Part shown: positions 5,850 through 24,795 of the stretch, piece by piece
How the letters are laid out: each line of letters begins with the position of its first letter
How positions within the stretch are numbered: position 1 is the stretch's first letter
NCBI RefSeq assembly: GCF_000143415.4
Contig: NW_003314270.1
Coordinates: 1,419,048 to 1,483,047 of the forward strand
Length of the DNA: 64,000 bases
Source: Selaginella moellendorffii
Lineage: Eukaryota; Plantae; Lycopodiophyta
Direction: 5' to 3'
Translations under genes and position numbers: made by a program
The notes under the pieces: generated by a model
What the model saw: the letters and a program-made list of their open reading frames with translations, nothing else
What the model was told of the DNA's origin: nothing
Database searches by the model: none

Positions 5850-8800
5850 GTATTGATTGTGCCAAAGCTGATGAGGTTTTTAAAGGAATTTAGGATCCAA
5901 TAATTGAAAATGATTAATGTTTTCTATTCAATTATTGATTTGATTTTATACCTTTTTTTAAAAAAATCTTCACTTATTGAGATAAAATAAATATTCTAAT
6001 ACATCCTTTAGTTTAATACCAATTTTAAATATACTATTAGTACATGTTTAAAAGTATAACATTAAACCCAATTATATAATACAGTGTAATTATATTTGTT
6101 CAAGTATTAGTAAACTTGGTTTAGCATCTGCACTTAACTAGATAAGCATAATCTTATGTATTTCTTGTTTCTATTTACTATTTATGGAAAGTGTCTAGAT
6201 TTGTTAATGAAGCATATTTATGGAATGTAGAAATTGTTTTGAATATAATGGTGTTAAATTTGCAATTTAACATTATTCTATATTTAGTAAGTTTTTATGA
6301 TTATCCGAAAGACTAACTTCTAGAACTTAGGTGAAAGCCCAAAGTGTGCATTGGTTGTGAGGGGTTTTTAATGTATAATAAAGATAATGGGTAGGTAGAG
6401 TATAGTGAACCAATTTAAAAAATAGGTTAGCCCCTTGCTTACATATATCTCCTTGTTTTGCAACCTAAGCCCATATTATACTAGTTAGTTAAGTACTTAT
6501 ATTCTCGCATTAAACCATTAGTATGCCAAAACAATACAAAATTCTATTTGGCTCCATTTGACATATTAGTCTTGGCATTGGAATGAAAAATGCTTTAAAA
6601 CTATTCTAATGTCACTTTGTACTCTTGTCTTTTCACTCTTAATGATGTAAATTTATAAATCATTTTGTATTTTGGTTTTTTCACTCTTTGTCTATATACT
6701 TGAGAGTTTGGCTTTATTCTTTCATTTAATGACCTAAAGCTTTATTCCGCTTTGTTGCCTTTGGCCCACATATCCAAGGGTTTAGATTCCACTCCATAAT
6801 TATCTTATATATAGGGTAAAAGGTGAAATCACATAATCTGTGGCATAAGGATTGGATATTTATGAAATATCCTATGCCTGATGCTATATAATTTTACCTT
6901 ACTTATATGTTAGTTACTCCAAAACTAGGGCTATTACACCAGGAATAAAAGTTTAATAATAATGCTCTAATTGTTATTCTTGCAATTGATTGTCATATTG
7001 AACAACAATATCAATAATAATTGTGAGAGATGTTAGATTTAAATGAGAAAGCATGACATCTTTAACATTATTATAAAGCCGAGGTGAAAATATTCCTTAA
7101 AAGTTGCATCATCCTATAAAATATTAGTTGTGACTATCTAGAACTCTAATGCATAGGCAGATGCAAATTTGGAGCTTTGACACAATCACTATAATTTATT
7201 GATAGTTGCATTTGATGAAATATTGAGCAAAAAGATCAAATCCCAAAAAACATGATCACTCTTTTTAAAAAGGGTAAAGAACTAGAAAAAATGTGTCACA
7301 ATAATAAGATATCTAATCAGTCCAATACAAAAAGTTGAAGTAGAAAATCAATTAAGTTGCATGATGATTCAAAGTTTTGTTGAGGAAACCATGGAACTAC
7401 CTATGTGCCATCAAACTTTGCTAATATACTAATTTTTGGCTCTAAATTAAAAAGCCACTATTAATTTGCTAAAGATCTGAGTGAAGTGTTATATTAGAGT
7501 GTTCCAATGTTTAATATAACTTTCATAGAGTATTAAGATCTGATTGAAGTTGAAGAAAAGGATATGAGGAAGCCATTAATATCAGAGTGTTCAAACTGTT
7601 AGAGAAAATGAAAGATGATGAAACAATTAATAAAATACTAAAACATTAGAGAAGAAAATATGGATTTATGTTAAAAACTTTAAATAAAATCCCTCAAAAC
7701 CATATTTTTGAAGGGGTAATGGAATAAATCACATAACAAATATTAAGTTATATCCTATGAGTAAAGGTTTAAGGTTTGATTCCCACCATAGATAGTAACA
7801 TATTTATGGAAAACAATTTATGAATTGACACAAAAAGGATTGATATATGACAAGTGTCAAGATTGAATCTAAGATGGAGTTCAAGAAGCTAGAGTGAACA
7901 TGAATAGACCAATAAAGTAGCTTGGTGAAATGTTTAAAAATCAACTTTAGAACTTCCAAAAGATCAAATGGTCAATACTCCCAATCCAAGTGTAGGTGGC
8001 ATTACTTACTTAGATACCTGGTATGGCTCATTAAAACCTCATTTTAACCGCATGGCTAGGGCACTCAAAGACAAAAGGTGAGGAAGTACCTACAAGACTT
8101 GTGTTGAACCACAATGTTTCGATGTTTTAGATTGTGGAAAGGAAGAGGAGCAATCCTCTTATATAGTGACTAAAGATATAGTTATGTGGTAAGGAAGTCC
8201 CAGTGGTCAATAAGACTTAGTGGTCAAGCTTTCGAGCTCTGACTTAGCAATGGTGTTGGCAAGCATAGTTGTGGACAACGAGGGATTTGGTGGGGACTGA
8301 AGAAGGGATATTAGGGAAGGGCATTCCTTATGTTTCTAGGCATCCTAAAAATACAAATGTGTGGTTATATGATAACCACTCATAAATAAATAGCTCAATA
8401 TTTGGGAGACAGGATTATAGCACAAGTTATCATGGATTACTAATGAGACAAAAGTGAATAGACATAGCTTTAGCATAACAGGCTGAAGTGCTAGTGGTAC
8501 CTTTAGGTGTTTATAGTGGGATCAAACACGTGGAACATTTGGATTTAGTGCAAGGTATAGAAATCATTTACGGGGTTAGTAAGTCTTTAAGTTGATAATA
8601 AAACTTATGGAGGTTGTGAATAAAACTCCTCTAAGTGGTCAAATATGGGGTTATAAAATGGAAAAATTAATAAGGAGAAGTGAGAAGAAGAAGTGAGCGA
8701 CCTTACTTTTGAAAAAGTGAATGAGTGTATATTTTTGTTATTTATGAATCAACCTTAAATTTTTTCTTCTAGATTGAGCTATAGTAAACTATGTTAGGCA

Positions 8801-11740
8801 AAACTCACTATAGCTATAATGCACCTGCAACTCAACCAATTGAGTGAGCTTACTTATGAGGCCATAAGCATAGCAAACATTTTCCTGCAAATGCAATAAT
8901 GAAATGGCGACCATATATGGAGCAATAGTTCCTATAATCCTAGACAACAAGGATGTTCAAGATTTTATGCATGATAATGAAGTTTAATTTCTTCTTAGAC
9001 CACATTGCAAAGGAATGCATTCTTTAAAGTTTAGGGGAAATGACAATAAAGGCAACGCAAAAATGCTAAGGAACAAAATCCTCTAGTGATACATTTAGGT
9101 ACTTTTGCTTTTTAGTGTAGCTTTGATTGATTATAAGTTTTTATAGATGCATAGGAAATGATTAAATAGTTTTGAAGTATCCTAGATGTTGGCAAAGAAG
9201 GTGTTTAAAAGGTGGTGAAGGACAAGGTCATCAATCATAATAGTATCTAAGGTCAAGCCATCACTACCACTTTTGGACGAGTGAAGAAGAGGATAACAAA
9301 ATAGCATTAGTTGATAAAGGTGTTGAGTCAGATACTAGATAACATTTACATCACAATAATGGTTAACAAGCTAATGAAAATATTTAAACATTTATCACCA
9401 TGTTTGCAGGGAGCCAAGCTTTGGTGAAGGAATGGTCACAAGGACTTGTGAAGAAGGTAGGCCACCTAAAAGAGCTCCAAAAAGCCAAAGACTGAGGTGA
9501 GCAAGTTAGAATGGATGCATCCAAGGATAATATGGCAAAGAAAGTGGCTGGCATGGAGGCTAAGTTGGCTTAAACTTCAACATGAGAGGAGACAATTGAA
9601 TAGAAGATAAATATAATTTGTGATCAACCACTAATGTTTATAGACACCTTAACACAAGTTAATGCCACTAACCTTGCCAAGGATCAGAAGATTGAAAAAT
9701 TTACATTAGACAAAGCTCTTCCAATGGATAATATTGCCACCACCTATACACCTGTACCTTTTGTAAGAGATCCTAGACTTGGAAGTGATCATCATGAGTA
9801 TCCTAGACATATCTACTCAAGAAAATACAATGAGCTGCAACTCTTTGACACAACACAGTGCTTAACACATTATGCTTCATTTACAACTAAGATTTTGATA
9901 AATGAGTGTCTACTTGTATGGCTATAGGCATGTGATCCTTCTATTGTGCTTCATCACAATTCTAAAAAATGAACATAGTAAGTGCTCTATCTATGACTAT
10001 GTCTTCTACAACCATGTTTACATGGTCTTTGGGCTCATATTAGACTCACTAGGTATAGTATGGAGATCTGATGGTACACAAGATAAATGAGCAAGTTCAT
10101 ATAGTCCCTACTACCTAAGACCGTCTCATATACAAGCTATATGCAATGCATAGAGGTGGTGAAGATGTCCATGCTCATTTTCACAAACTATCTACACAAG
10201 TTAGAATATAATGTAGATGTTATAGTTTATAAGATCATATTCATGACCACTTCATTTGATGAAATTCTATGCCAAACAACCACTACATGAGCTATGCATT
10301 AGACAAGCACTTAGGTATCATAAAGAAATAGTTGGTGAAGTTGAGCTTACATAGCTTTAGGTTCTCCATGATTTTTAGAATAAAGATCAATTGGGATGGG
10401 ATAACTTAAACAACTTGGACAACAAATTTGGATGTATATGACAAAGTAAATGTTCCTTCATTTTGGTATATTGGGAATCATCTTCATATATATTTTTTTT
10501 TCTTATAGCAACCCCTTGGTAGTGATTGAGATCTCAAATTACTAGGAGGTGTAATTTCAATCCCATGCATTTTTGCATATCACATAGAAGTAGTTCATGT
10601 ATTAACGATATTATTTTTGGTTGATTAGACTTTTTTTCATAATTATTTTCTAATGTATAATCTTCTCTCTTCTATTATAGAATATCTTTTTGCTCATGTT
10701 AGAAACACTTATTTTTCATTGGGAAGTGCTAAACATATATTTATGGGAGGGTCCTCATTTATGTGGTAAGTGATTTTTTTGGTCTCTTTTAGTGCTTTTA
10801 TGTTTGTTTTTGCCAAAGCTCTTGCTATACTTGCTTGGTGATTGTGATTAGTTTCATAAGTGTTTTGCTTTGATTCCCTTGCCTGAAGAGTCCATTATAT
10901 ACTAATTGCATATGGACAAAGTTTTTATTAAGGCACTAGATTTATAAAAATAAAATAAAATAACCTTTTTTTGTATATTTAAGGAAAATCAAATAATACA
11001 TTTCAACCTACTTGGGAAGTAGTCCCTAAAGGAAAAATATATCAGTTGGGAACTATTTTTTTCTTACAAGCAAAAAAACTTATCACTAATGTAAAGATAA
11101 ATTTTCTATAAGTTTATCCCATAAAGAGAATTAATTTTCTGAATGAAGATTCTTTCTTTTATCCTATAGGAATTTAAGGGTTTCTATAAAAAATTAATTT
11201 CCTTTTGGAAATTATTTCTGCCATTGGAAAAAATTCTGATTTTTAGGAATAATATTTTCCCAGAGGGAAAAAATACCCAAGAAGAATAAAATTTCCATTG
11301 ATTCTTCACATTATCAAAATTTGTCACTAATGTGGCAGGTTAGACGAATGTTTTTGTCAAAACAATTTTCATTACCCTTTAGAAAATTCTGATCCATTAG
11401 ATAAAAATATTTGTTAAATTTCAAAACTTGTTCAGATGGTAGAATAATAACACTAACGACTTATAGTCCGTGCATAATATGGTTGAATGTGTATGAAATG
11501 GCCATCCATATTAAATGCAAATACCATATAAAAGTCATACTTGATGAACCATTTAAAAGCCATAGAAGTGTTGGGTTCCAAATTGCCATAGACAAGTGTT
11601 ACTAATTGCTCAATTGTATCACCCTAACTAATAAGTAAAATACCACATCAAACTAAATAAGTGATAAAGACTAAGAAAATTATCAAGTGATCCATCATTT
11701 CTATTATCCTAGTGTAAGACAATCAGAGTGAATTCCACAT
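5850..11740. mobile_element. AT-rich, CpG-depleted, ORF-less block; probable heavily decayed transposable-element relic
   Basis: ~6 kb with almost no CG dinucleotides and only short ORFs, in sharp contrast to flanking genes; no LTR/TIR or diagnostic domain could be identified. Confidence 0.4.
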
Positions 11741-11747
11741 GCCATGG

Positions 11748-11930
11748 AAAACTTTCAAAGTCCAACATAACTAGAAGAACCAAAAGCAAGCAAAACTTTG
11801 ACTAAGTTTGTTCTATTTGCTTTTAGTTCTTCTAAAGACTTTGAAAGTGTCCACGCTACACTAGACTTTGAAAGTTTTCAGTCCGCTTGCTTTTAGTTCT
11901 TCTAGCTACACTGGACTTTGAAAGTTTTCA
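11748..11930. repeat. Imperfect inverted repeat with internal direct repeats
   Basis: aaaactttcaaagtccaacataactagaagaaccaaaagcaagc (11748-11791) is the near reverse complement of gcttgcttttagttcttctagctacactggactttgaaagtttt (~11885-11928); gactttgaaag occurs 3 times. Confidence 0.8.
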
Positions 11931-12000
11931 GTGGTTGTAGCTTGAAGGATTGATCGAGCTTGCCCAAGAAATCAATTGATCACTGGGGCACTGGGAAGAG

Positions 12001-19782: not shown

Positions 19783-20507
19783 TTGAAAGCCCAACGGCCT
19801 GGATGGGGCCAGTTGGCAACGCTTCAGCCGTCGGATGAGGGAGTCGTGTGTTGATCCTTTTCCCTGGAAGTGGTAAAGGTGACGAAACTTGCCCTTCAAG
19901 AACAAAGGCTACATCCAACATTTAAAGGGCATAAGTAAATGCCTGAGTAATGACTATCAAAATGAAAAAATTATCACTACATCGTCAGCTTTTATATTAT
20001 TGCATGTCTTTTCAGTCCAATAGCACCTCGAATATAATAGATTTAATTCTAGTGTTCTGTGACACTGAGATCAATTTTGCTGATGATACGAGCTCATGTT
20101 TACAATCAAGATGGCATGAGATCGTGGCATTTGGGATTGACGTGACCGGGTGACGATCGCCAACATGCTTGGTCATTTCGTTGTCTTGAATGAAATTTTA
20201 CACAGGTGCAGAATCAACCTTGGAATAGGGTTCAAAAAAACATCGCAAGGAAGTCATAACAACCACAAACTCCTCAATTTGTCAAGCCCCACGGACTTGA
20301 ACACTTATAATTCCTGTATGGATAATGCTCATTCCCCGCACCATGCGGCCCAACTTGCAATTATAATTAGTGCGTAAAGCCGTATTCGACTTGCACTCCC
20401 TTACGTGGTCGTAGGTCCCATGCTCACACAAATGGACTGTAAACACCATCTTATTTCGACTATAAGAACTTGCTATGGACTCCATCAAGACGAAGAAGCA
20501 AGCAACC

Positions 20508-21808
20508 ATGAAGAACATCAGGGTCTTTGTGGGGTTCTTGGTTCTGATGAACGTTCTTGTTGCGGCAATCGCCCAGCAATGCGGTCCCAACGATCCATGC
20601 CCGGACAATATGTGCTGCAGCCAGTTCGGACGGTGCGGGTGCGATTCGGCTTGCGGAGCTGGATGCCAGGGCCAATGCAACTGGTGCCAAGGAGGAGGGG
20701 GTGGCGGCGACGGAGGAGCAAATGGTAGAAAGAACTTTCATCTTCTCTGAAGTTGGTTTGATCGCTGATGTTTGTTTCTTGTTCTTGCCAAGATATTGGG
20801 GTCAACTATGGGAGAGTTGCGAACAATCTTCCGCAGCCGGATCAAGTGGTGAATCTCATCAAGTCCCTGCAGTTCAAGAGGGTGAAGATCTTCGACACGG
20901 ACCGAACAGTTTTGCGGGCTTTTGCGAATTCGGGGATCCGGCTCACAGTCGCGGTGACCAACCAGGAGTTCAGCTCCATCGCCAGGAGCTCCAACGCGGC
21001 GTCGGACTGGGTCAGGAATAGAATCGCGCCGATTTACCCCGCAACGAACGTCGAATTCATCGCGGTGGGGAACGAAGTCCTTTCGGATCCCGGGCTCCCC
21101 TGGCCCGATCTAGTCCCTTCAATGTGGAATCTCAGAAACGCGCTGAACTCGCTTGGCTTCAACCAGATCAAGGTCACGACGCCAATCGCAACGGACATCC
21201 TGAAAGAATCATTCCCGCCATCCGCGGGAGAATTCAGATCGGACAACGGAAGGGACTCAGTCGTGAATTCGCTGCTGGGCTTCCTGTCCTCCACGAACTC
21301 GGTGTTCATGGCCAATGTGTACACCTTCTTCGCCTGGCAGGGGAATCCCCGCGACATAAGCCTGGAATACGCCCTCTTCCAAAGCAACGACGTCAAGGTC
21401 TGGGACGGCGGCAAGGGCTACACGAATCTTTTCGATGCCATGGTGGATGCGATCTACTCGGCCATGGAGAGGAAGGGCTACGGGAACCTGCCGCTGGCAA
21501 TTGGGGAATCCGGCTGGCCCAGCGGGGGAGCGCCAGGCGCCACCGTGGAGAATGCCAAGGCGTTCAACAGCAGATTGATTCGACGCACCAGGAGCGGAGT
21601 CGGGACGCCCAGGAAGCCGGGAGGGCTCGCCGCTTGGGTGTTCGCTCTGTTCAACGAGAATCAGAAGGGCGGGCCTGAGCTGGAGAGGCACTTCGGGCTG
21701 CTCTATCCTAACGGATCCCCAGTCTACCCGCTGCAGCGGCCGCGCCATCCGATTGTCAGGGAAGATGCGGGCAATAATTCATCATCCCTTCTCCACTCGG
21801 CAGCATGA
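20508..21808 (+). CDS. Secreted hevein (CBM18) chitin-binding domain fused to GH17 beta-1,3-glucanase, 2 exons
   Basis: Signal peptide + QQCG..CPDNMCCSQFGRCG..ACGAGCQGQC + Gly linker; phase-1 intron 20725-20792 joins in frame to DIGVNYG; catalytic VGNE and IGESGWPS present, FALFNENQK, ERHFGL. Confidence 0.9.
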
Positions 21809-22150
21809 AACTTGTGAACAAGAGTGAGAGAACCCTAAGCTCCAGAGAAGAGCAGAGATACTGTATTTTGGCATGCCAGAGATTCTTGTCTCGATCGCAA
21901 TCCTGAATGCGAGGGATCTTTTCTCGACGCAGTGCGAGGTCTCAGTTTGATCTGATCGGGTCAATGATATTTGACTTTCTTTGGATCCACGTGGCAGAGG
22001 GAATGTTAGGTTTAATCGGGGCGAAGCAATATTATTAGATTTTTGTTTTTCGAAATTTCACTGCTGCCGGTTCCAGAGTGGATCGCTCATGGTACCCGGA
22101 CGCTGCTTACAAGTCGTCCCCTACGTGTGATAGGTGTGGTACGCCGTTGC

Positions 22151-24795
22151 TTAGGGATTAATGTTCTTCAATATCTTGAATCGATCGGCTTTTGCTCCAT
22201 CCTTCGCTATTATATACTGGAAGAACAGGTTTGCTAGGTTTTAGGAATGTTTGCAACTATGGTACCTCGAACAGGAGCTCGCTTTTGTTGGCTGAGATCC
22301 GGCTATACCCAAATTCAGAGACTCGAACCATGCTCCATGAACTCCACTGAAGCAGCATATAGTTTCGAAGTTATGAACTATTGAAAACTTACGTTCGCTG
22401 GGAAGAGATCGAGGCTGAATCCAGCCATGCCAACCACGGCGTGAATTGGAGCTGATCCATTACTGACGTAAACATCGACCCCAGTATCATCTTTGGCTGG
22501 GACCTGGACGCAGCGGCTTTGATTCACAGCACAGGTGCGCTCGTAGTTGTGAACATGTCCCCACAATGCCAAATCAACCTAGAGAGAAGAATTGAAAAGC
22601 TTGCCAGACATCTATATATATTATATTTACCTTGCTACTCACTAGAAGAGGCTCTACAGCTTCTACAAAATCAGGATCGATTGCGGGTAAAATTTTGGAG
22701 AGAAGCCCGCCTTGCGTAGAGTACATTGGGCGATGCCTAATAATATGAAAATAATTAGAAATAATTTAGAAATAAATGGTGAGTTATGTACCCGACAAAT
22801 ACCAGCCATGGTGTGTGAGTTCTGTTTACAGAAGCAAGATTGTGTTCCATCCAAGAATACTATAGGAATGATACTATACCTAACTTAAAGCAAAACGGAA
22901 TTTTCTTTTACCTGTTCACTGTTTGGAGTCCAGTCGTGCTCCGTGGAGATTACTGTGAGATGCACGGGACCAAGTTCTATAGAGTACCATGGTTTGTCGA
23001 TGCCTTGGGCAGGCATCGGGAAGTAAGATCGATATGGAACTCCACACTCGCCTCCCGAGTCTGTGGAGTTGTATTTGGATCCTGAGCCAGGATGATCCCT
23101 GGGCGATCATAGTAAATCAAGAACTTGGAGCAAATGATATAGATTTCGGTACCTCTCGTGGTTTCCAATGGCCGTCATGTAAGGGATCCTGGAAGCCACA
23201 GGCTCAATCATCTCAAGGAAGTGATCCCATTCCGCGAGAAAGCCAGTGGCATAACTTATATCGCCTATGTGGAATATGGTGTCCACAGTCTGGTTGGCAA
23301 GAGAATCTATCACTTGTAACGCTCCAGGCTGCAATATATACTTGCTAAGGTAGAATTTTCAAGAAGTCTATATTACTTGTATGTAGTGTTCTAAGCTGTT
23401 GTCTCGTTCAGCCTTCCCCATGTCTCCAAAAACAATGAAGCTTGCACTGTTTGATCCATCCCCTGGAGGAGTGGTAAAATTCTTGAGTTTGCTCCAGCCA
23501 ACTTTCTCACTATGGATTTAACCAAACGTAGGCTAATGTTGCTGAAACCCACATAGTTTTCTTACCTTCCATATCTGTAAGAAAAACTCTTGCCAGGAGA
23601 AAGACTTGTCATTGTTGCATGATGCATATATCCAGGAGTGTGCCATCCAAAATCTGTAGCTGGCGAACCTAAAAGAATTACCCAAAATAAAGTTAAAAAA
23701 AAAAAATGTTAACTTTTACCACACATATCTTCTTTTTGGAAAGTTGTGATTTCGCTTGTGGAGCTCCGACCATCATACTCGACGTTCTGAGTGGCATTAT
23801 CGTTGCTGATCCAAGTTACCACCATCTTGAGTTAAAGAAATTAGTAGAGTAAAGTTGTGAAAAGATTTAAAAGCTTACAGAGGTGCCAGAAGAGTCCTTG
23901 AGAGACAAATGCCCGTATAAAGGGGCCCCAGGCCTCGCAAACGAAAGCGGTGGGGCGATCTTGAGAATGCAGGGAGTTACAAGCCCGCCGCCAAAGAACA
24001 CAAAGGTGACGGCGGTTCTTATGTTGACAAGACGGAAAGCAAGTGATCCAGAGCAAGTCCTCACGCTACATGAATCAGTGACACACGTCTTGTTGGAGCA
24101 GTTAATGTAGCCAGGATCATCGCTGAGGAACTTGAACTGGAAGAAATCAAAATCGATCAAGAGCCAAGTTAAGATCAAGATCATTAGAGCTATCTTTCTT
24201 GCTTTTGTAGAACAACCTTGAGGGGATAGTCGCAAAGCAAAGGCAGGCTGGAAAAGTCTCCTGTCTGCAGATAAAGTGCTTTGTTTGCAAGGCAGTCAGA
24301 GTAGCTGTAGAACGAAAACGACCGATGTGAAGTGCGGGTTTTCGGAGCTTCCGCATTGAAGAATCACCAGATATCAAATGGAGCAAGCAGACAAACTAAT
24401 ATGGAGCAAGAGGGAATAAGGGAGAAAGAAGAATGGACAGAAGAAAATGGAAGAGAAAGATGGTTATTCGGAAAATTGGGAGCTTACTTGTGAGTTGCTT
24501 CCGAGAACACTCCAATCCAATCTCTGGAACTCGGCCGAAGAACACCACTCACGGTCGTCACCACTGTCTGGACACTGGCGAGAGGGCCTGCGGTGTCAAG
24601 CATCAAGTTGAGGTATGGATTTGGATCCCGGCATTCCAGCAATGCCCGCCTTGTGATGGAACCAAAAGAAGACCTCCCCGAGACCCTCAAATTCGCACCG
24701 GTAGCATCACCAGCTCCAGCACAAGCACCAGCTTGTAAAATTGCGAGCAGAACCAGTTCCAGGATAATCACCCGCGGAACTGGAATTCCAGCCAT
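22151..24795 (-). CDS. Purple acid phosphatase (nucleotide pyrophosphatase/PAP27-like), multi-exon
   Basis: Signal peptide, DWIGVFS, FRLVNIR, FGDMGK, HIGDISYATG, TAIGNHERD, WGHVHNYERTC, EFGYSRI. Confidence 0.92.

What the first reader, a model, noticed from the sequence alone, without database searches (positions are those of the whole stretch)
20508..21808. Hevein chitin-binding domain fused to a GH17 beta-1,3-glucanase
Seen: signal peptide, an 8-9-Cys hevein domain (CCSQFGRCG) and a Gly hinge, joined through a 68-nt phase-1 GT-AG intron (20725-20792) precisely in frame to DIGVNYG of a GH17 with both catalytic glutamates. Established: plant hevein domains normally head GH19 chitinases (class I/IV) or barwin proteins, whereas GH17s carry C-terminal X8/CBM43 or nothing. 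Inference: exon shuffling created a PR-2/PR-3 hybrid that anchors on fungal chitin and cuts adjacent glucan. One aromatic of the hevein motif (SxFGW/YCG) is Arg here, so binding may be altered.
Basis: partly seen in the sequence, partly recalled or inferred. Interest (0 to 1): 0.78.

Follow-up and report, generated by a model that had tools for sequence, protein, structure and literature searches.

The report
Hevein-like module fused to spikemoss glucanase
A real, spliced and transcribed gene of the spikemoss Selaginella moellendorffii joins a chitin-lectin-type (hevein) cysteine knot to a beta-1,3-glucanase. Plant surveys do not list this pairing, it recurs only in some mosses and Riccia liverworts, and the spikemoss copy has lost most of the residues that normally grip chitin.

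Summary
Exon 1 (20508-20724) encodes a signal peptide, a 10-Cys hevein-type module and a Gly hinge. A 68-nt phase-1 GT-AG intron (20725-20792) joins it in frame to a complete GH17 domain with both catalytic Glu (20793-21808).

Assembled transcripts from four studies carry exactly this junction, and none covers the intron. NCBI already holds the same 410-aa model (P0001), labelled only as a glucanase.

The architecture is rare but not unique. Riccia liverworts and an unnamed moss group have hevein+GH17 proteins. A profile search of 1.84 billion cluster representatives found only those two clusters. Published plant CAZyme and lectin surveys list no hevein/GH17.

- **Chitin binding.** Two of three chitin-stacking aromatics are gone (Trp23→Arg, Tyr30 deleted). 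Allelic changes in exon 1 are mostly non-synonymous, while the GH17 domain is under purifying selection. Chitin anchoring is therefore doubtful.
- **Origin.** The intron is the ordinary GH17 signal-peptide/mature-domain intron, also present in the hevein-less sister paralog. The module therefore arrived with, or inside, exon 1.

Whether the spikemoss and moss fusions share one origin is unresolved. The scan noted the same thing on another piece of this genome (s1-419417), probably the second haplotype.

Verdict: a new variant of a known kind, of moderate interest.

The parts
20461..20466 (+). TATAAG box, about 30-40 nt upstream of the 5' ends of the assembled transcripts
   Evidence: Sequence read. 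Contig 5' ends lie at 20496-20516. The in-frame upstream ATG at 20475 lies outside all contigs.
20508..20573 (+). Signal peptide, residues 1-22 (MKNIRVFVGFLVLMNVLVAAIA). Cleavage after AIA is inferred.
   Evidence: Translation. The segment is hydrophobic and modelled as helix 2-22. No signal-peptide predictor was available.
20574..20690 (+). Hevein-type (CBM18-like) 10-Cys module, residues 23-61. Ser38 and Phe40 are kept, Arg42 stands in place of Trp23, and the Tyr30 position is deleted.
   Evidence: Pfam PF00187 E=3e-4, below cut-off. PDB sequence hits: pokeweed lectin-C at 4e-13, WGA, hevein. Alignments. Domain model pLDDT 79.6, and all 23 Foldseek hits are hevein domains.
20691..20724 (+). 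Gly-rich hinge (GGGGGGDGGAN) and the first base of the split codon D73; end of exon 1
   Evidence: Modelled as disordered, pLDDT below 50.
20725..20792 (+). 68-nt phase-1 GT-AG intron
   Evidence: A contig of run X2 skips exactly these 68 nt. Contigs of X1, X3 and X4 that end at 20724 or start at 20792 carry the other exon's letters as loose ends. No contig covers the intron. The same phase and nearly the same position occur in hevein-less P0004.
20793..21733 (+). GH17 catalytic domain, residues 73-386. The acid/base Glu167 is at 21074-21076 (GNE) and the nucleophile Glu311 at 21506-21508 (GESGWPS).
   Evidence: Pfam PF00332 at 301.6 bits. PDB 6jms E=5e-85. AF2 pLDDT above 90, and Foldseek TM 0.94-0.97 to plant endo-1,3-beta-glucanases. 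Both Glu are nearly invariant in alignment A2.
21734..21808 (+). 24-residue C-terminal extension (QRPRHPIVREDAGNNSSSLLHSAA) with N-x-S sequons, then the stop codon. A possible vacuolar-sorting propeptide (inferred).
   Evidence: Translation; pLDDT below 50. The tail is not hydrophobic, so a GPI signal is unlikely. The comparison with C-terminal propeptides of class I glucanases rests on general knowledge and was not tested.
21809..21891 (+). 3' UTR up to the common 3' end of the assembled transcripts
   Evidence: Contigs of X1 and X3 end at 21891.

Best explanation
This is a two-exon, transcribed gene of Selaginella moellendorffii. It encodes a secretory-pathway endo-beta-1,3-glucanase (GH17) that carries an N-terminal hevein-derived, five-disulfide-type (10-Cys) module on a glycine hinge.

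The GH17 part has every hallmark of an active enzyme and evolves under purifying selection. It most likely cleaves beta-1,3-glucan, either fungal/oomycete wall glucan or callose.

The hevein part keeps the fold-defining cysteines, Ser19 and one aromatic. It has lost two of the three aromatic residues that stack on GlcNAc, and it tolerates amino-acid polymorphism. In this species it is more likely a weakened or re-purposed module than an efficient chitin anchor.

The gene belongs to a rare hevein-hinge-GH17 layout also found in a moss group and in Riccia liverworts, and not reported from seed plants. The module sits wholly inside exon 1, upstream of the ancestral phase-1 GH17 intron. It was therefore gained by replacement or extension of the 5' exon.

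Shown here: gene structure, splicing, transcription, domain identities, residue losses and relatives. Inferred: enzyme activity, weak chitin binding, defence role and route of origin.
For: Splicing and transcription:
- One search shows the junction in 4 runs from 4 studies and no contig over the intron.
- The same model is a public protein.

GH17 domain:
- Pfam, PDB sequence match, AF2 model and Foldseek all agree.
- Both catalytic Glu are present.

Hevein identity:
- Sequence and fold evidence.

Loss of binding residues:
- Arg stands where 80 of 87 hevein domains have an aromatic, and the Tyr column is deleted.
- The Pfam score is below the cut-off.

Polymorphism:
- Exon 1 has 4 non-synonymous and 1 synonymous variant (M14T, A48G, G55S, G62R).
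- Exon 2 has 2 non-synonymous and 7 synonymous variants.

Relatives with the same layout:
- P0007, P0031, P0077 and P0126, which sit in a moss GH17 clade, and Riccia P0147 and P0156.
- Only these two clusters match a hevein+GH17-N-terminus profile in one stretch among 1.84e9 cluster representatives.

Intron homology.

Literature:
- The tables list CBM18-GH19, CBM18-EXPN, CBM43-GH17, hevein/GH18, hevein/GH19, hevein/Barwin, hevein/RlpA, hevein/kinase and hevein/NodB.
- No hevein/GH17 appears, although S. moellendorffii, P. patens, S. fallax and Marchantia were surveyed.
Against: - No biochemical data exist. Some hevein-type domains bind chitin with fewer aromatics, and Phe40 plus Ser38 remain, so residual binding cannot be excluded.
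- The polymorphism contrast rests on 14 variants read from assembled contigs, and its significance was not computed here.
- The hevein region is not confidently modelled in the full-length prediction. The domain-only model leans on a hevein alignment, so the fold match is partly circular.
- The run type ('RNA') is a guess of the index. RNA origin is inferred from the missing intron and flanks.
- The 50%-identity representative library can hide further fusions. P0001 itself was not listed as a representative.
Confidence: 0.7

Rival explanations
1. One reading: a fully functional PR-2/PR-3 hybrid. The hevein module anchors the enzyme on fungal chitin so that the GH17 domain cuts neighbouring beta-1,3-glucan.
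For: The signal peptide - hevein - hinge - catalytic domain layout copies class I chitinases. All cysteines, Ser38, Gly41 and one aromatic (Phe40) are kept. The moss and R. fluitans relatives keep the full aromatic set, so the model probably fits them.
Against: Arg42 replaces Trp23 and the Tyr30 position is deleted. The Pfam score is below the cut-off. The second allele changes A48G and G55S inside the module. No pathogen-response evidence was found, and W-boxes are not enriched upstream.
Confidence: 0.22
2. Pro-protein model: the Gly hinge is a processing site. The precursor is cut into a free hevein-like cysteine-rich peptide (antimicrobial or signalling) and a free glucanase, as pro-hevein is cut into hevein and a barwin domain.
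For: The flexible Gly-rich linker is modelled as disordered. The module has the size and 10-Cys content of hevein-like antimicrobial peptides; 2lb7, a 10-Cys hevein-type peptide, is among the fold hits. Precursor processing of hevein is established knowledge.
Against: No evidence here for cleavage. The 10-Cys pattern differs from known 10-Cys peptides. Class I chitinases keep their hevein domain on similar hinges.
Confidence: 0.06
3. Gene-model artefact: two separate genes or a retained intron, with a short hevein peptide ending at the stop at 20748-20750 and a separate glucanase starting at the ATG at 20768.
For: ORFs 20475-20750 and 20768-21808 exist when the DNA is read without splicing.
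Against: Every contig that reaches 20724 or 20792 continues into the other exon, and none enters the intron. A glucanase starting at 20768 would lack a signal peptide.
Confidence: 0.02
4. Question of origin, independent of the function models above, so its confidence is not meant to sum with theirs. One ancient fusion in early land plants, inherited by mosses and lycophytes and lost many times (all seed plants, P0004, P. patens), as opposed to separate fusions in Selaginella, mosses and Riccia.
For: It has a 5-residue first loop, an extra Cys right after Cys5-Gly, and an extra C-x2-C tail. The moss modules are the most similar to the Selaginella one, at 53-58% identity. Moss paralogs show the module decaying (P0060, P0012, P0021), so losses do happen.
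Against: On the GH17 tree P0001 is sister to hevein-less Selaginella P0004 (99*). It lies in another well-supported clade than the moss group, and Riccia lies in a third. Holding P0001+P0004 with the moss clade costs 31 lnL units, p-AU 0.046. At least 4-5 gains or losses are needed. The moss gene has no intron. Riccia has an ordinary 8-Cys hevein, so at least Riccia looks independent.
Confidence: 0.4

Closest known systems
Class I plant chitinases (CBM18 - hinge - GH19, PR-3)
   Same: Signal peptide, one N-terminal hevein domain, Gly/Pro-rich hinge, then a wall-polysaccharide hydrolase. The best fold matches of the module are the hevein domains of class I chitinases 6lnr and 2dkv.
   Different: The catalytic domain is GH17 (beta-1,3-glucanase), not GH19. 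The module has 10 Cys and lacks Trp23 and Tyr30.
Plant GH17 endo-1,3-beta-glucanases (PR-2; e.g. CJP38 6jms, banana 2cyg, barley 1ghs, Hev b 2 4hpg)
   Same: 42-47% identity in Foldseek's structure alignments to 6jms, 4hpg, 1ghs, 1ghr and 2cyg (38% to the potato enzyme), TM 0.94-0.97, both catalytic Glu, and a single phase-1 intron just before the mature N-terminus.
   Different: Known GH17s carry nothing or a C-terminal X8/CBM43. This one has an N-terminal hevein-type module and no X8.
Uncharacterised hevein+GH17 proteins of mosses (P0007, P0031, P0077, P0126) and Riccia (P0147, P0156; UniProt 'Chitin-binding type-1 domain-containing protein')
   Same: Same domain order and Gly/Ser hinge. The moss proteins share the 10-Cys pattern. 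The Riccia genes share a phase-1 intron in the hinge.
   Different: The GH17 domains are 37-48% identical over the full-length alignment A2 (BLASTP local 49-51% to the three moss proteins) and do not form one clade. The moss proteins and R. fluitans keep all binding aromatics. The moss gene is intronless. Riccia has the canonical 8-Cys hevein. R. sorocarpa P0156 lacks both catalytic Glu.
Pro-hevein / PR-4 (hevein + barwin) and hevein + RlpA-like DPBB proteins
   Same: An N-terminal hevein module on a linker ahead of an unrelated defence-type domain. This is the common pattern of hevein 'heading' other domains, frequent in bryophytes and Selaginella.
   Different: The partner domain is different. 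Processing is known for pro-hevein and unknown here.
Marchantia GH17/GNA proteins (PMC6362431, Table S3)
   Same: A bryophyte GH17 joined to a lectin module, so GH17-lectin chimeras exist outside seed plants.
   Different: The lectin is GNA-type, is listed after GH17, and has a different sugar specificity.

Membership tests
GH17 (Pfam PF00332, plant endo-1,3-beta-glucanases) | Sequence match above the curated threshold over the whole domain | tested here: met
   301.6 bits against a cut-off of 28.2, profile positions 1-304 of 306. PDB 6jms E=5e-85.
GH17 (Pfam PF00332, plant endo-1,3-beta-glucanases) | Catalytic acid/base Glu (GNE motif) and nucleophile Glu (E-[ST]-G-W-P motif) | tested here: met
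   E167 in VGNEV and E311 in GESGWPS. Both columns are nearly invariant in 40 sequences and aligned to 6jms. The assignment of roles rests on general knowledge of GH17.
GH17 (Pfam PF00332, plant endo-1,3-beta-glucanases) | (beta/alpha)8 barrel fold | tested here: met
   AF2 pLDDT above 90 for residues ~73-390. Foldseek TMt 0.94-0.97 and rmsd 1.2-1.5 A to 6jms, 1ghs and 2cyg.
GH17 (Pfam PF00332, plant endo-1,3-beta-glucanases) | Hydrolysis of beta-1,3-glucan | not testable with these tools
   Needs an enzyme assay.
CBM18 / hevein domain (Pfam PF00187) | Pfam match above the gathering score | tested here: not met
   21.4 bits against 27.8, E=3e-4. The precomputed Pfam list for P0001 shows PF00332 only.
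CBM18 / hevein domain (Pfam PF00187) | Eight cysteines in hevein spacing (C-Xn-C-X4-5-CC-X5-C-X6-C-X3-C-X3-C) | tested here: met
   All eight align with the invariant Cys columns of 87 hevein domains, plus two extra Cys.
CBM18 / hevein domain (Pfam PF00187) | Similarity to solved hevein-type structures in sequence and fold | tested here: met
   phmmer against PDB: 1ulk at 4e-13, WGA at 3e-12, hevein and Ac-AMP2 also listed. The domain model matches only hevein domains, best 6lnr with TMq 0.76 and rmsd 0.9 A. The model was built on a hevein alignment, so this is partly circular.
CBM18 / hevein domain (Pfam PF00187) | Chitin-binding site: Ser19 plus aromatics at positions 21, 23 and 30 (hevein numbering) | tested here: not met
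   Ser38 and Phe40 are present. Arg42 stands at position 23, where 80 of 87 domains are aromatic. The Tyr30 column is a gap, next to Ala48, which is Gly in the other allele.
CBM18 / hevein domain (Pfam PF00187) | Binding of chitin or chitooligosaccharides | not testable with these tools
   Needs a pull-down, ITC or NMR titration.
Hevein-hinge-GH17 fusion proteins of non-seed plants (moss group, Riccia) | Same order: signal peptide, single hevein module, Gly/Ser hinge, GH17 | tested here: met
   Alignment A1; Pfam on P0007, P0147 and P0156.
Hevein-hinge-GH17 fusion proteins of non-seed plants (moss group, Riccia) | Common descent of the fused gene (GH17 domains forming one clade) | tested here: not met
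   The fusions sit in three separate, well-supported places on the tree. The constrained tree has p-AU 0.046. The shared 10-Cys variant with mosses points the other way, so descent of the module itself is inconclusive.
Class I (vacuolar) PR-2 glucanases | C-terminal glycosylated propeptide for vacuolar sorting | tested here: inconclusive
   A 24-residue non-conserved tail with NNS/NSS sequons is present. No sorting predictor or experiment was available.

The most novel reading that the evidence does not exclude
Hevein-GH17 is an old land-plant defence enzyme class, a chitin-targeted glucanase that seed plants lost and that survives in mosses, Riccia and Selaginella. In Selaginella the lectin module has been re-tuned (Trp->Arg, Tyr deleted, fifth disulfide) to another ligand, or is released as a cysteine-rich peptide. 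That would give a natural series from binding-competent to re-purposed modules on one enzyme scaffold.
Probability: 0.25. Interest if true: 0.65.

Novelty: new variant of a known kind. Interest (0 to 1): 0.5.

Why it matters
Chitinases and beta-1,3-glucanases are the textbook synergistic pair of plant antifungal enzymes. In seed plants only the chitinase carries the chitin-binding hevein domain.

A natural glucanase with that domain shows that early-diverging land plants tried the other combination, possibly more than once. The full-site moss and R. fluitans proteins and the degraded Selaginella protein form a ready-made comparison. It can be used to ask what wall-targeting adds to a glucanase.

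The case also shows that threshold-based domain annotation hid the architecture. NCBI and Pfam label this protein as GH17 only. A 2019 lectin survey that covered this genome, P. patens, S. fallax and Marchantia lists no hevein/GH17.

Tried and rejected
- **Donor search.** A word-based search with the hevein region of P0001 (residues 21-72) found only P0001 itself. No donor gene in Selaginella was identified. This is a weak negative, because the region is short and E-values are computed for 5.8e9 sequences.
- **ESM Atlas.** A look-up with the moss N-terminus gave nothing.
- **Moss species.** The species behind P0007, P0031 and P0077 could not be named, since the sources are metagenome and Logan contigs only. 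'Moss' rests on their place in a GH17 clade with Physcomitrium and Ceratodon.
- **Full-length AF2.** It gave no usable model of the hevein part, pLDDT below 50. This was rescued only with a domain alignment.
- **Local copies.** tblastn found no second hevein or GH17 copy in the window.
- **W-boxes.** The upstream kilobase has 1, against 0.66 per kb in the window, so this gives no support for pathogen-responsive regulation.
- **P. patens relic.** An upstream hevein relic at P. patens P0128 was looked for and not found.
- **Literature.** Searches for CBM18+GH17, PF00187+PF00332 and hevein+glucanase+Selaginella or moss returned only papers that list the families separately.
- **Joined sequence.** Exons were searched by reference, and the database's own record P0001 was used where a full-length protein was needed. 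The exons were concatenated only inside one script, to number codons for the variants.

Full report
**What is there.**
- The window is Selaginella moellendorffii. [quoted passage not shown]
- The sequence of P0001 equals exon 1 (20508-20724) plus exon 2 (20793-21808) exactly.
- Exon 1 is 217 nt, so the 68-nt GT..AG intron (20725-20792) is phase 1. It splits codon D73, directly before IGVNYG.
- The protein reads, in order:
  - signal peptide, residues 1-22;
  - a Cys-rich module, residues 23-61;
  - a Gly hinge, residues 62-72;
  - GH17, residues 73-386;
  - a 24-residue tail with N-x-S sequons.

**Is it spliced and expressed?**
- I laid contigs of four runs from four different studies on 20200-22300.
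- One 1159-nt contig (X2) runs 20504-20723 and 20792-21730, skipping the 68 nt with GT..AG ends.
- In the three other runs, contigs that stop at 20724 continue with ATATTGGGGTCAAC, the start of exon 2. Contigs that start at 20792 are preceded by GACGGAGGAGCAAAT, the end of exon 1.
- Nothing covers the intron or 20342-20483, so these assemblies derive from mRNA, although the index only guesses 'RNA'.
- The 5' ends lie at 20496-20516, downstream of a TATAAG at 20461-20466. ATG 20508 is therefore the start, and the in-frame ATG at 20475 is not in the transcripts. The 3' ends lie at about 21891.
Contigs cannot exclude a rare retained-intron form.

**Domain identities.**
- *Exon 2.*
  - It is a full GH17: Pfam 301.6 bits and PDB 6jms E=5e-85.
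  - The AF2 model has pLDDT above 90. Foldseek gives TM 0.94-0.97 to plant endo-1,3-beta-glucanases.
  - The acid/base Glu167 (GNE) and the nucleophile Glu311 (GESGWPS) lie in nearly invariant columns.
- *Exon 1.*
  - It scores only 21.4 bits on Pfam Chitin_bind_1, against a cut-off of 27.8. That is why databases show GH17 alone.
  - It matches solved hevein-type lectins: pokeweed lectin-C at 4e-13, WGA, hevein and Ac-AMP2.
  - All eight canonical cysteines align with 86 other hevein domains.
  - A domain-only AF2 model (pLDDT 79.6) matches only hevein domains. The best is the hevein domain of chitinase 6lnr, TMq 0.76 and rmsd 0.9 A. This is partly circular, because the alignment consisted of hevein domains.

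**What is unusual inside the module.**
- It has 10 cysteines. One extra Cys lies right after Cys5-Gly (C-G-C), and one lies in a C-x2-C tail.
- Of the chitin-binding residues (Ser19, Trp21, Trp23 and Tyr30 in hevein; general knowledge), Ser38 and Phe40 remain.
- Position 23 is Arg42. In 87 hevein domains this position is aromatic 80 times and Arg 4 times.
- The Tyr30 column is deleted.
- Transcript contigs show a second allele with A48G, G55S and G62R, plus M14T in the signal peptide.
- Exon 1 has 4 non-synonymous and 1 synonymous variant. Exon 2 has 2 non-synonymous and 7 synonymous variants.
- The numbers are small, but they fit a constrained enzyme carrying a relaxed module.

**Relatives.**
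- *Moss group.*
  - Searches with exon 2 and then with a relative found hevein+GH17 proteins P0007, P0031, P0077 and P0126. They come from metagenomes and Logan assemblies.
  - In the GH17 tree they lie inside a clade whose named members are Physcomitrium and Ceratodon.
  - These moss proteins keep W/Y-G-Y and the Tyr, and they share the same 10-Cys pattern and short first loop as Selaginella.
  - Moss paralogs show the module partly deleted (P0060), scrambled (P0012, P0021) or absent (P0041, P0018, P. patens P0128).
- *Riccia.* P0147 (Riccia fluitans) and P0156 (R. sorocarpa) are also hevein+GH17. They have an ordinary 8-Cys hevein.
- *Rarity.*
  - I searched a profile of the hevein-hinge-GH17 N-terminus against 1.84 billion cluster representatives.
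  - Only two matched in one stretch, P0007 and P0156.
  - The other multi-stretch hits are tandem GH17 or multi-hevein lectins.
  - Clustering at 50% identity can hide members, as it hides P0001, so this count is a lower bound.

**Origin.**
- On GH17 trees (FastTree with 196 rows, IQ-TREE with 83 rows) P0001 is sister to Selaginella P0004, a 338-aa GH17 without hevein (99*). The pair lies in a clade with other Selaginella and seed-plant GH17s.
- The moss fusions lie in a moss clade (97*). Riccia lies elsewhere.
- Forcing P0001+P0004 together with the moss clade costs 31 log-likelihood units, p-AU 0.046, which is borderline.
- At least 4-5 gains or losses of the module are needed on the tree.
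- Intron mapping gives:

| Gene | Intron | Position relative to IGV |
|---|---|---|
| P0001 | 68 nt, phase 1 | split codon 1 before IGV |
| P0004 (no hevein) | single 65-nt intron, phase 1 | split codon 2 before IGV, between signal peptide and mature enzyme |
| Riccia P0147 | 485 nt, phase 1 | in the hinge, 6 codons before IGV |
| Riccia P0156 | 619 nt, phase 1 | in the hinge, 6 codons before IGV |
| Moss P0031 | none, one uninterrupted ORF in a 19-kb DNA contig | not applicable |

- The Selaginella intron is therefore the family's ordinary intron. The hevein+hinge block lies within exon 1, and no intron separates it from the signal peptide.
- This fits replacement of the 5' exon by one from a hevein-headed gene, or an insertion into exon 1. 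It does not fit a cassette exon flanked by two introns.
- No donor was found.
- It stays open whether Selaginella and the mosses inherited one fusion (shared 10-Cys variant) or made it separately (GH17 tree). Riccia looks independent.

**Literature.**
- Angiosperm CAZyme surveys list CBM18-GH19, CBM18-EXPN and CBM43-GH17 only (PMC4440533, PMC6852159).
- The lectin-architecture survey of Van Holle and Van Damme (PMC6362431, Table S3) covers Marchantia, Sphagnum fallax, P. patens and S. moellendorffii. It lists hevein with GH18, GH19, Barwin, RlpA-like, kinase and NodB, and GH17/GNA in Marchantia. It lists no hevein/GH17.
- Five further full-text searches found no report of the combination.
- The library is not exhaustive, and CAZy and InterPro could not be queried.

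**Mechanism.**
- Most likely (0.7) this is an active secretory-pathway beta-1,3-glucanase whose hevein-derived head is a weakened or re-purposed module.
- A pro-protein that releases a Cys-rich peptide is a minor alternative.
- An annotation artefact is excluded by the transcripts.

**Other scan notes.**
- Another piece of this genome carries a finding with the same title and length (s1-419417). It is probably the second haplotype, which would match the two alleles seen in RNA.
- Further notes describe hevein modules joined to jacalin, GH18 or EG45-like domains, to a membrane anchor, or standing alone in this genome. I did not test these. They suggest that hevein heads are unusually mobile in Selaginella.

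- No self-joined spliced sequence was sent to any search tool.
- Exons were searched by reference, and the public record P0001 served as the full-length protein.

**Verdict.**
- This is a new variant of a known kind, with interest 0.5.

Noticed in passing
P0156 (Riccia sorocarpa), locus L013:1501-3361: This hevein+GH17 protein lacks both catalytic glutamates (VAVGNQV and IISSTGWPS, against GNE and SETGWPS in R. fluitans). It also has Arg at the Trp23 position. It could be a catalytically dead, lectin-like derivative or a decaying gene.
   Followed up: partly
P0060, P0012, P0021, P0041, P0018 (moss-clade GH17 proteins): Close paralogs of the moss fusion show the hevein module internally deleted (P0060), turned into a scrambled Cys-rich stretch with no Pfam hit (P0012, P0021), or gone (P0041, P0018). 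This is a visible decay series of the module.
   Followed up: partly
L002:725-1108 and L003:505-888 (minus strand), about 2 kb upstream of the moss hevein-GH17 gene: A thaumatin-family (PR-5-type) ORF lies next to the moss fusion gene, hinting at a small cluster of defence-type genes.
   Followed up: no
L012:2501-3538 (Physcomitrium patens P0128): The annotated intronless GH17 gene starts without a signal peptide (MGSVEVGSDVPDLHYGGGKGSEKHRDRCPTTVGICYG). A 'GGG...C' stretch may be a remnant of the hinge. No hevein relic was found upstream. The model may be truncated or the gene degenerate.
   Followed up: partly
window 22017-22572, minus strand: A neighbouring transcribed gene on the minus strand has a 49-nt intron at 22217-22265 (CT..AC on the plus strand) seen in two runs. 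The ORF 22378-22572 contains GHVHNYER, which from memory resembles purple acid phosphatases. Pfam gave no hit on this short piece.
   Followed up: partly
window 21954 and 21984 (3' UTR / intergenic): In run X4, labelled as a different organism, the contig continues past 21891 to 22222 with 4-nt and 30-nt deletions and 14 substitutions. It is a close relative or another accession with a longer or read-through 3' end.
   Followed up: no
window 6001-12000: An AT-rich block (GC 0.29-0.36, against about 0.45-0.55 elsewhere). It was not examined and is possibly repeat or transposon sequence.
   Followed up: no
PMC6362431, Supplementary Table 3: Marchantia polymorpha is listed with nine GH17/GNA-lectin chimeras, another GH17-lectin pairing confined to a bryophyte.
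   Followed up: no
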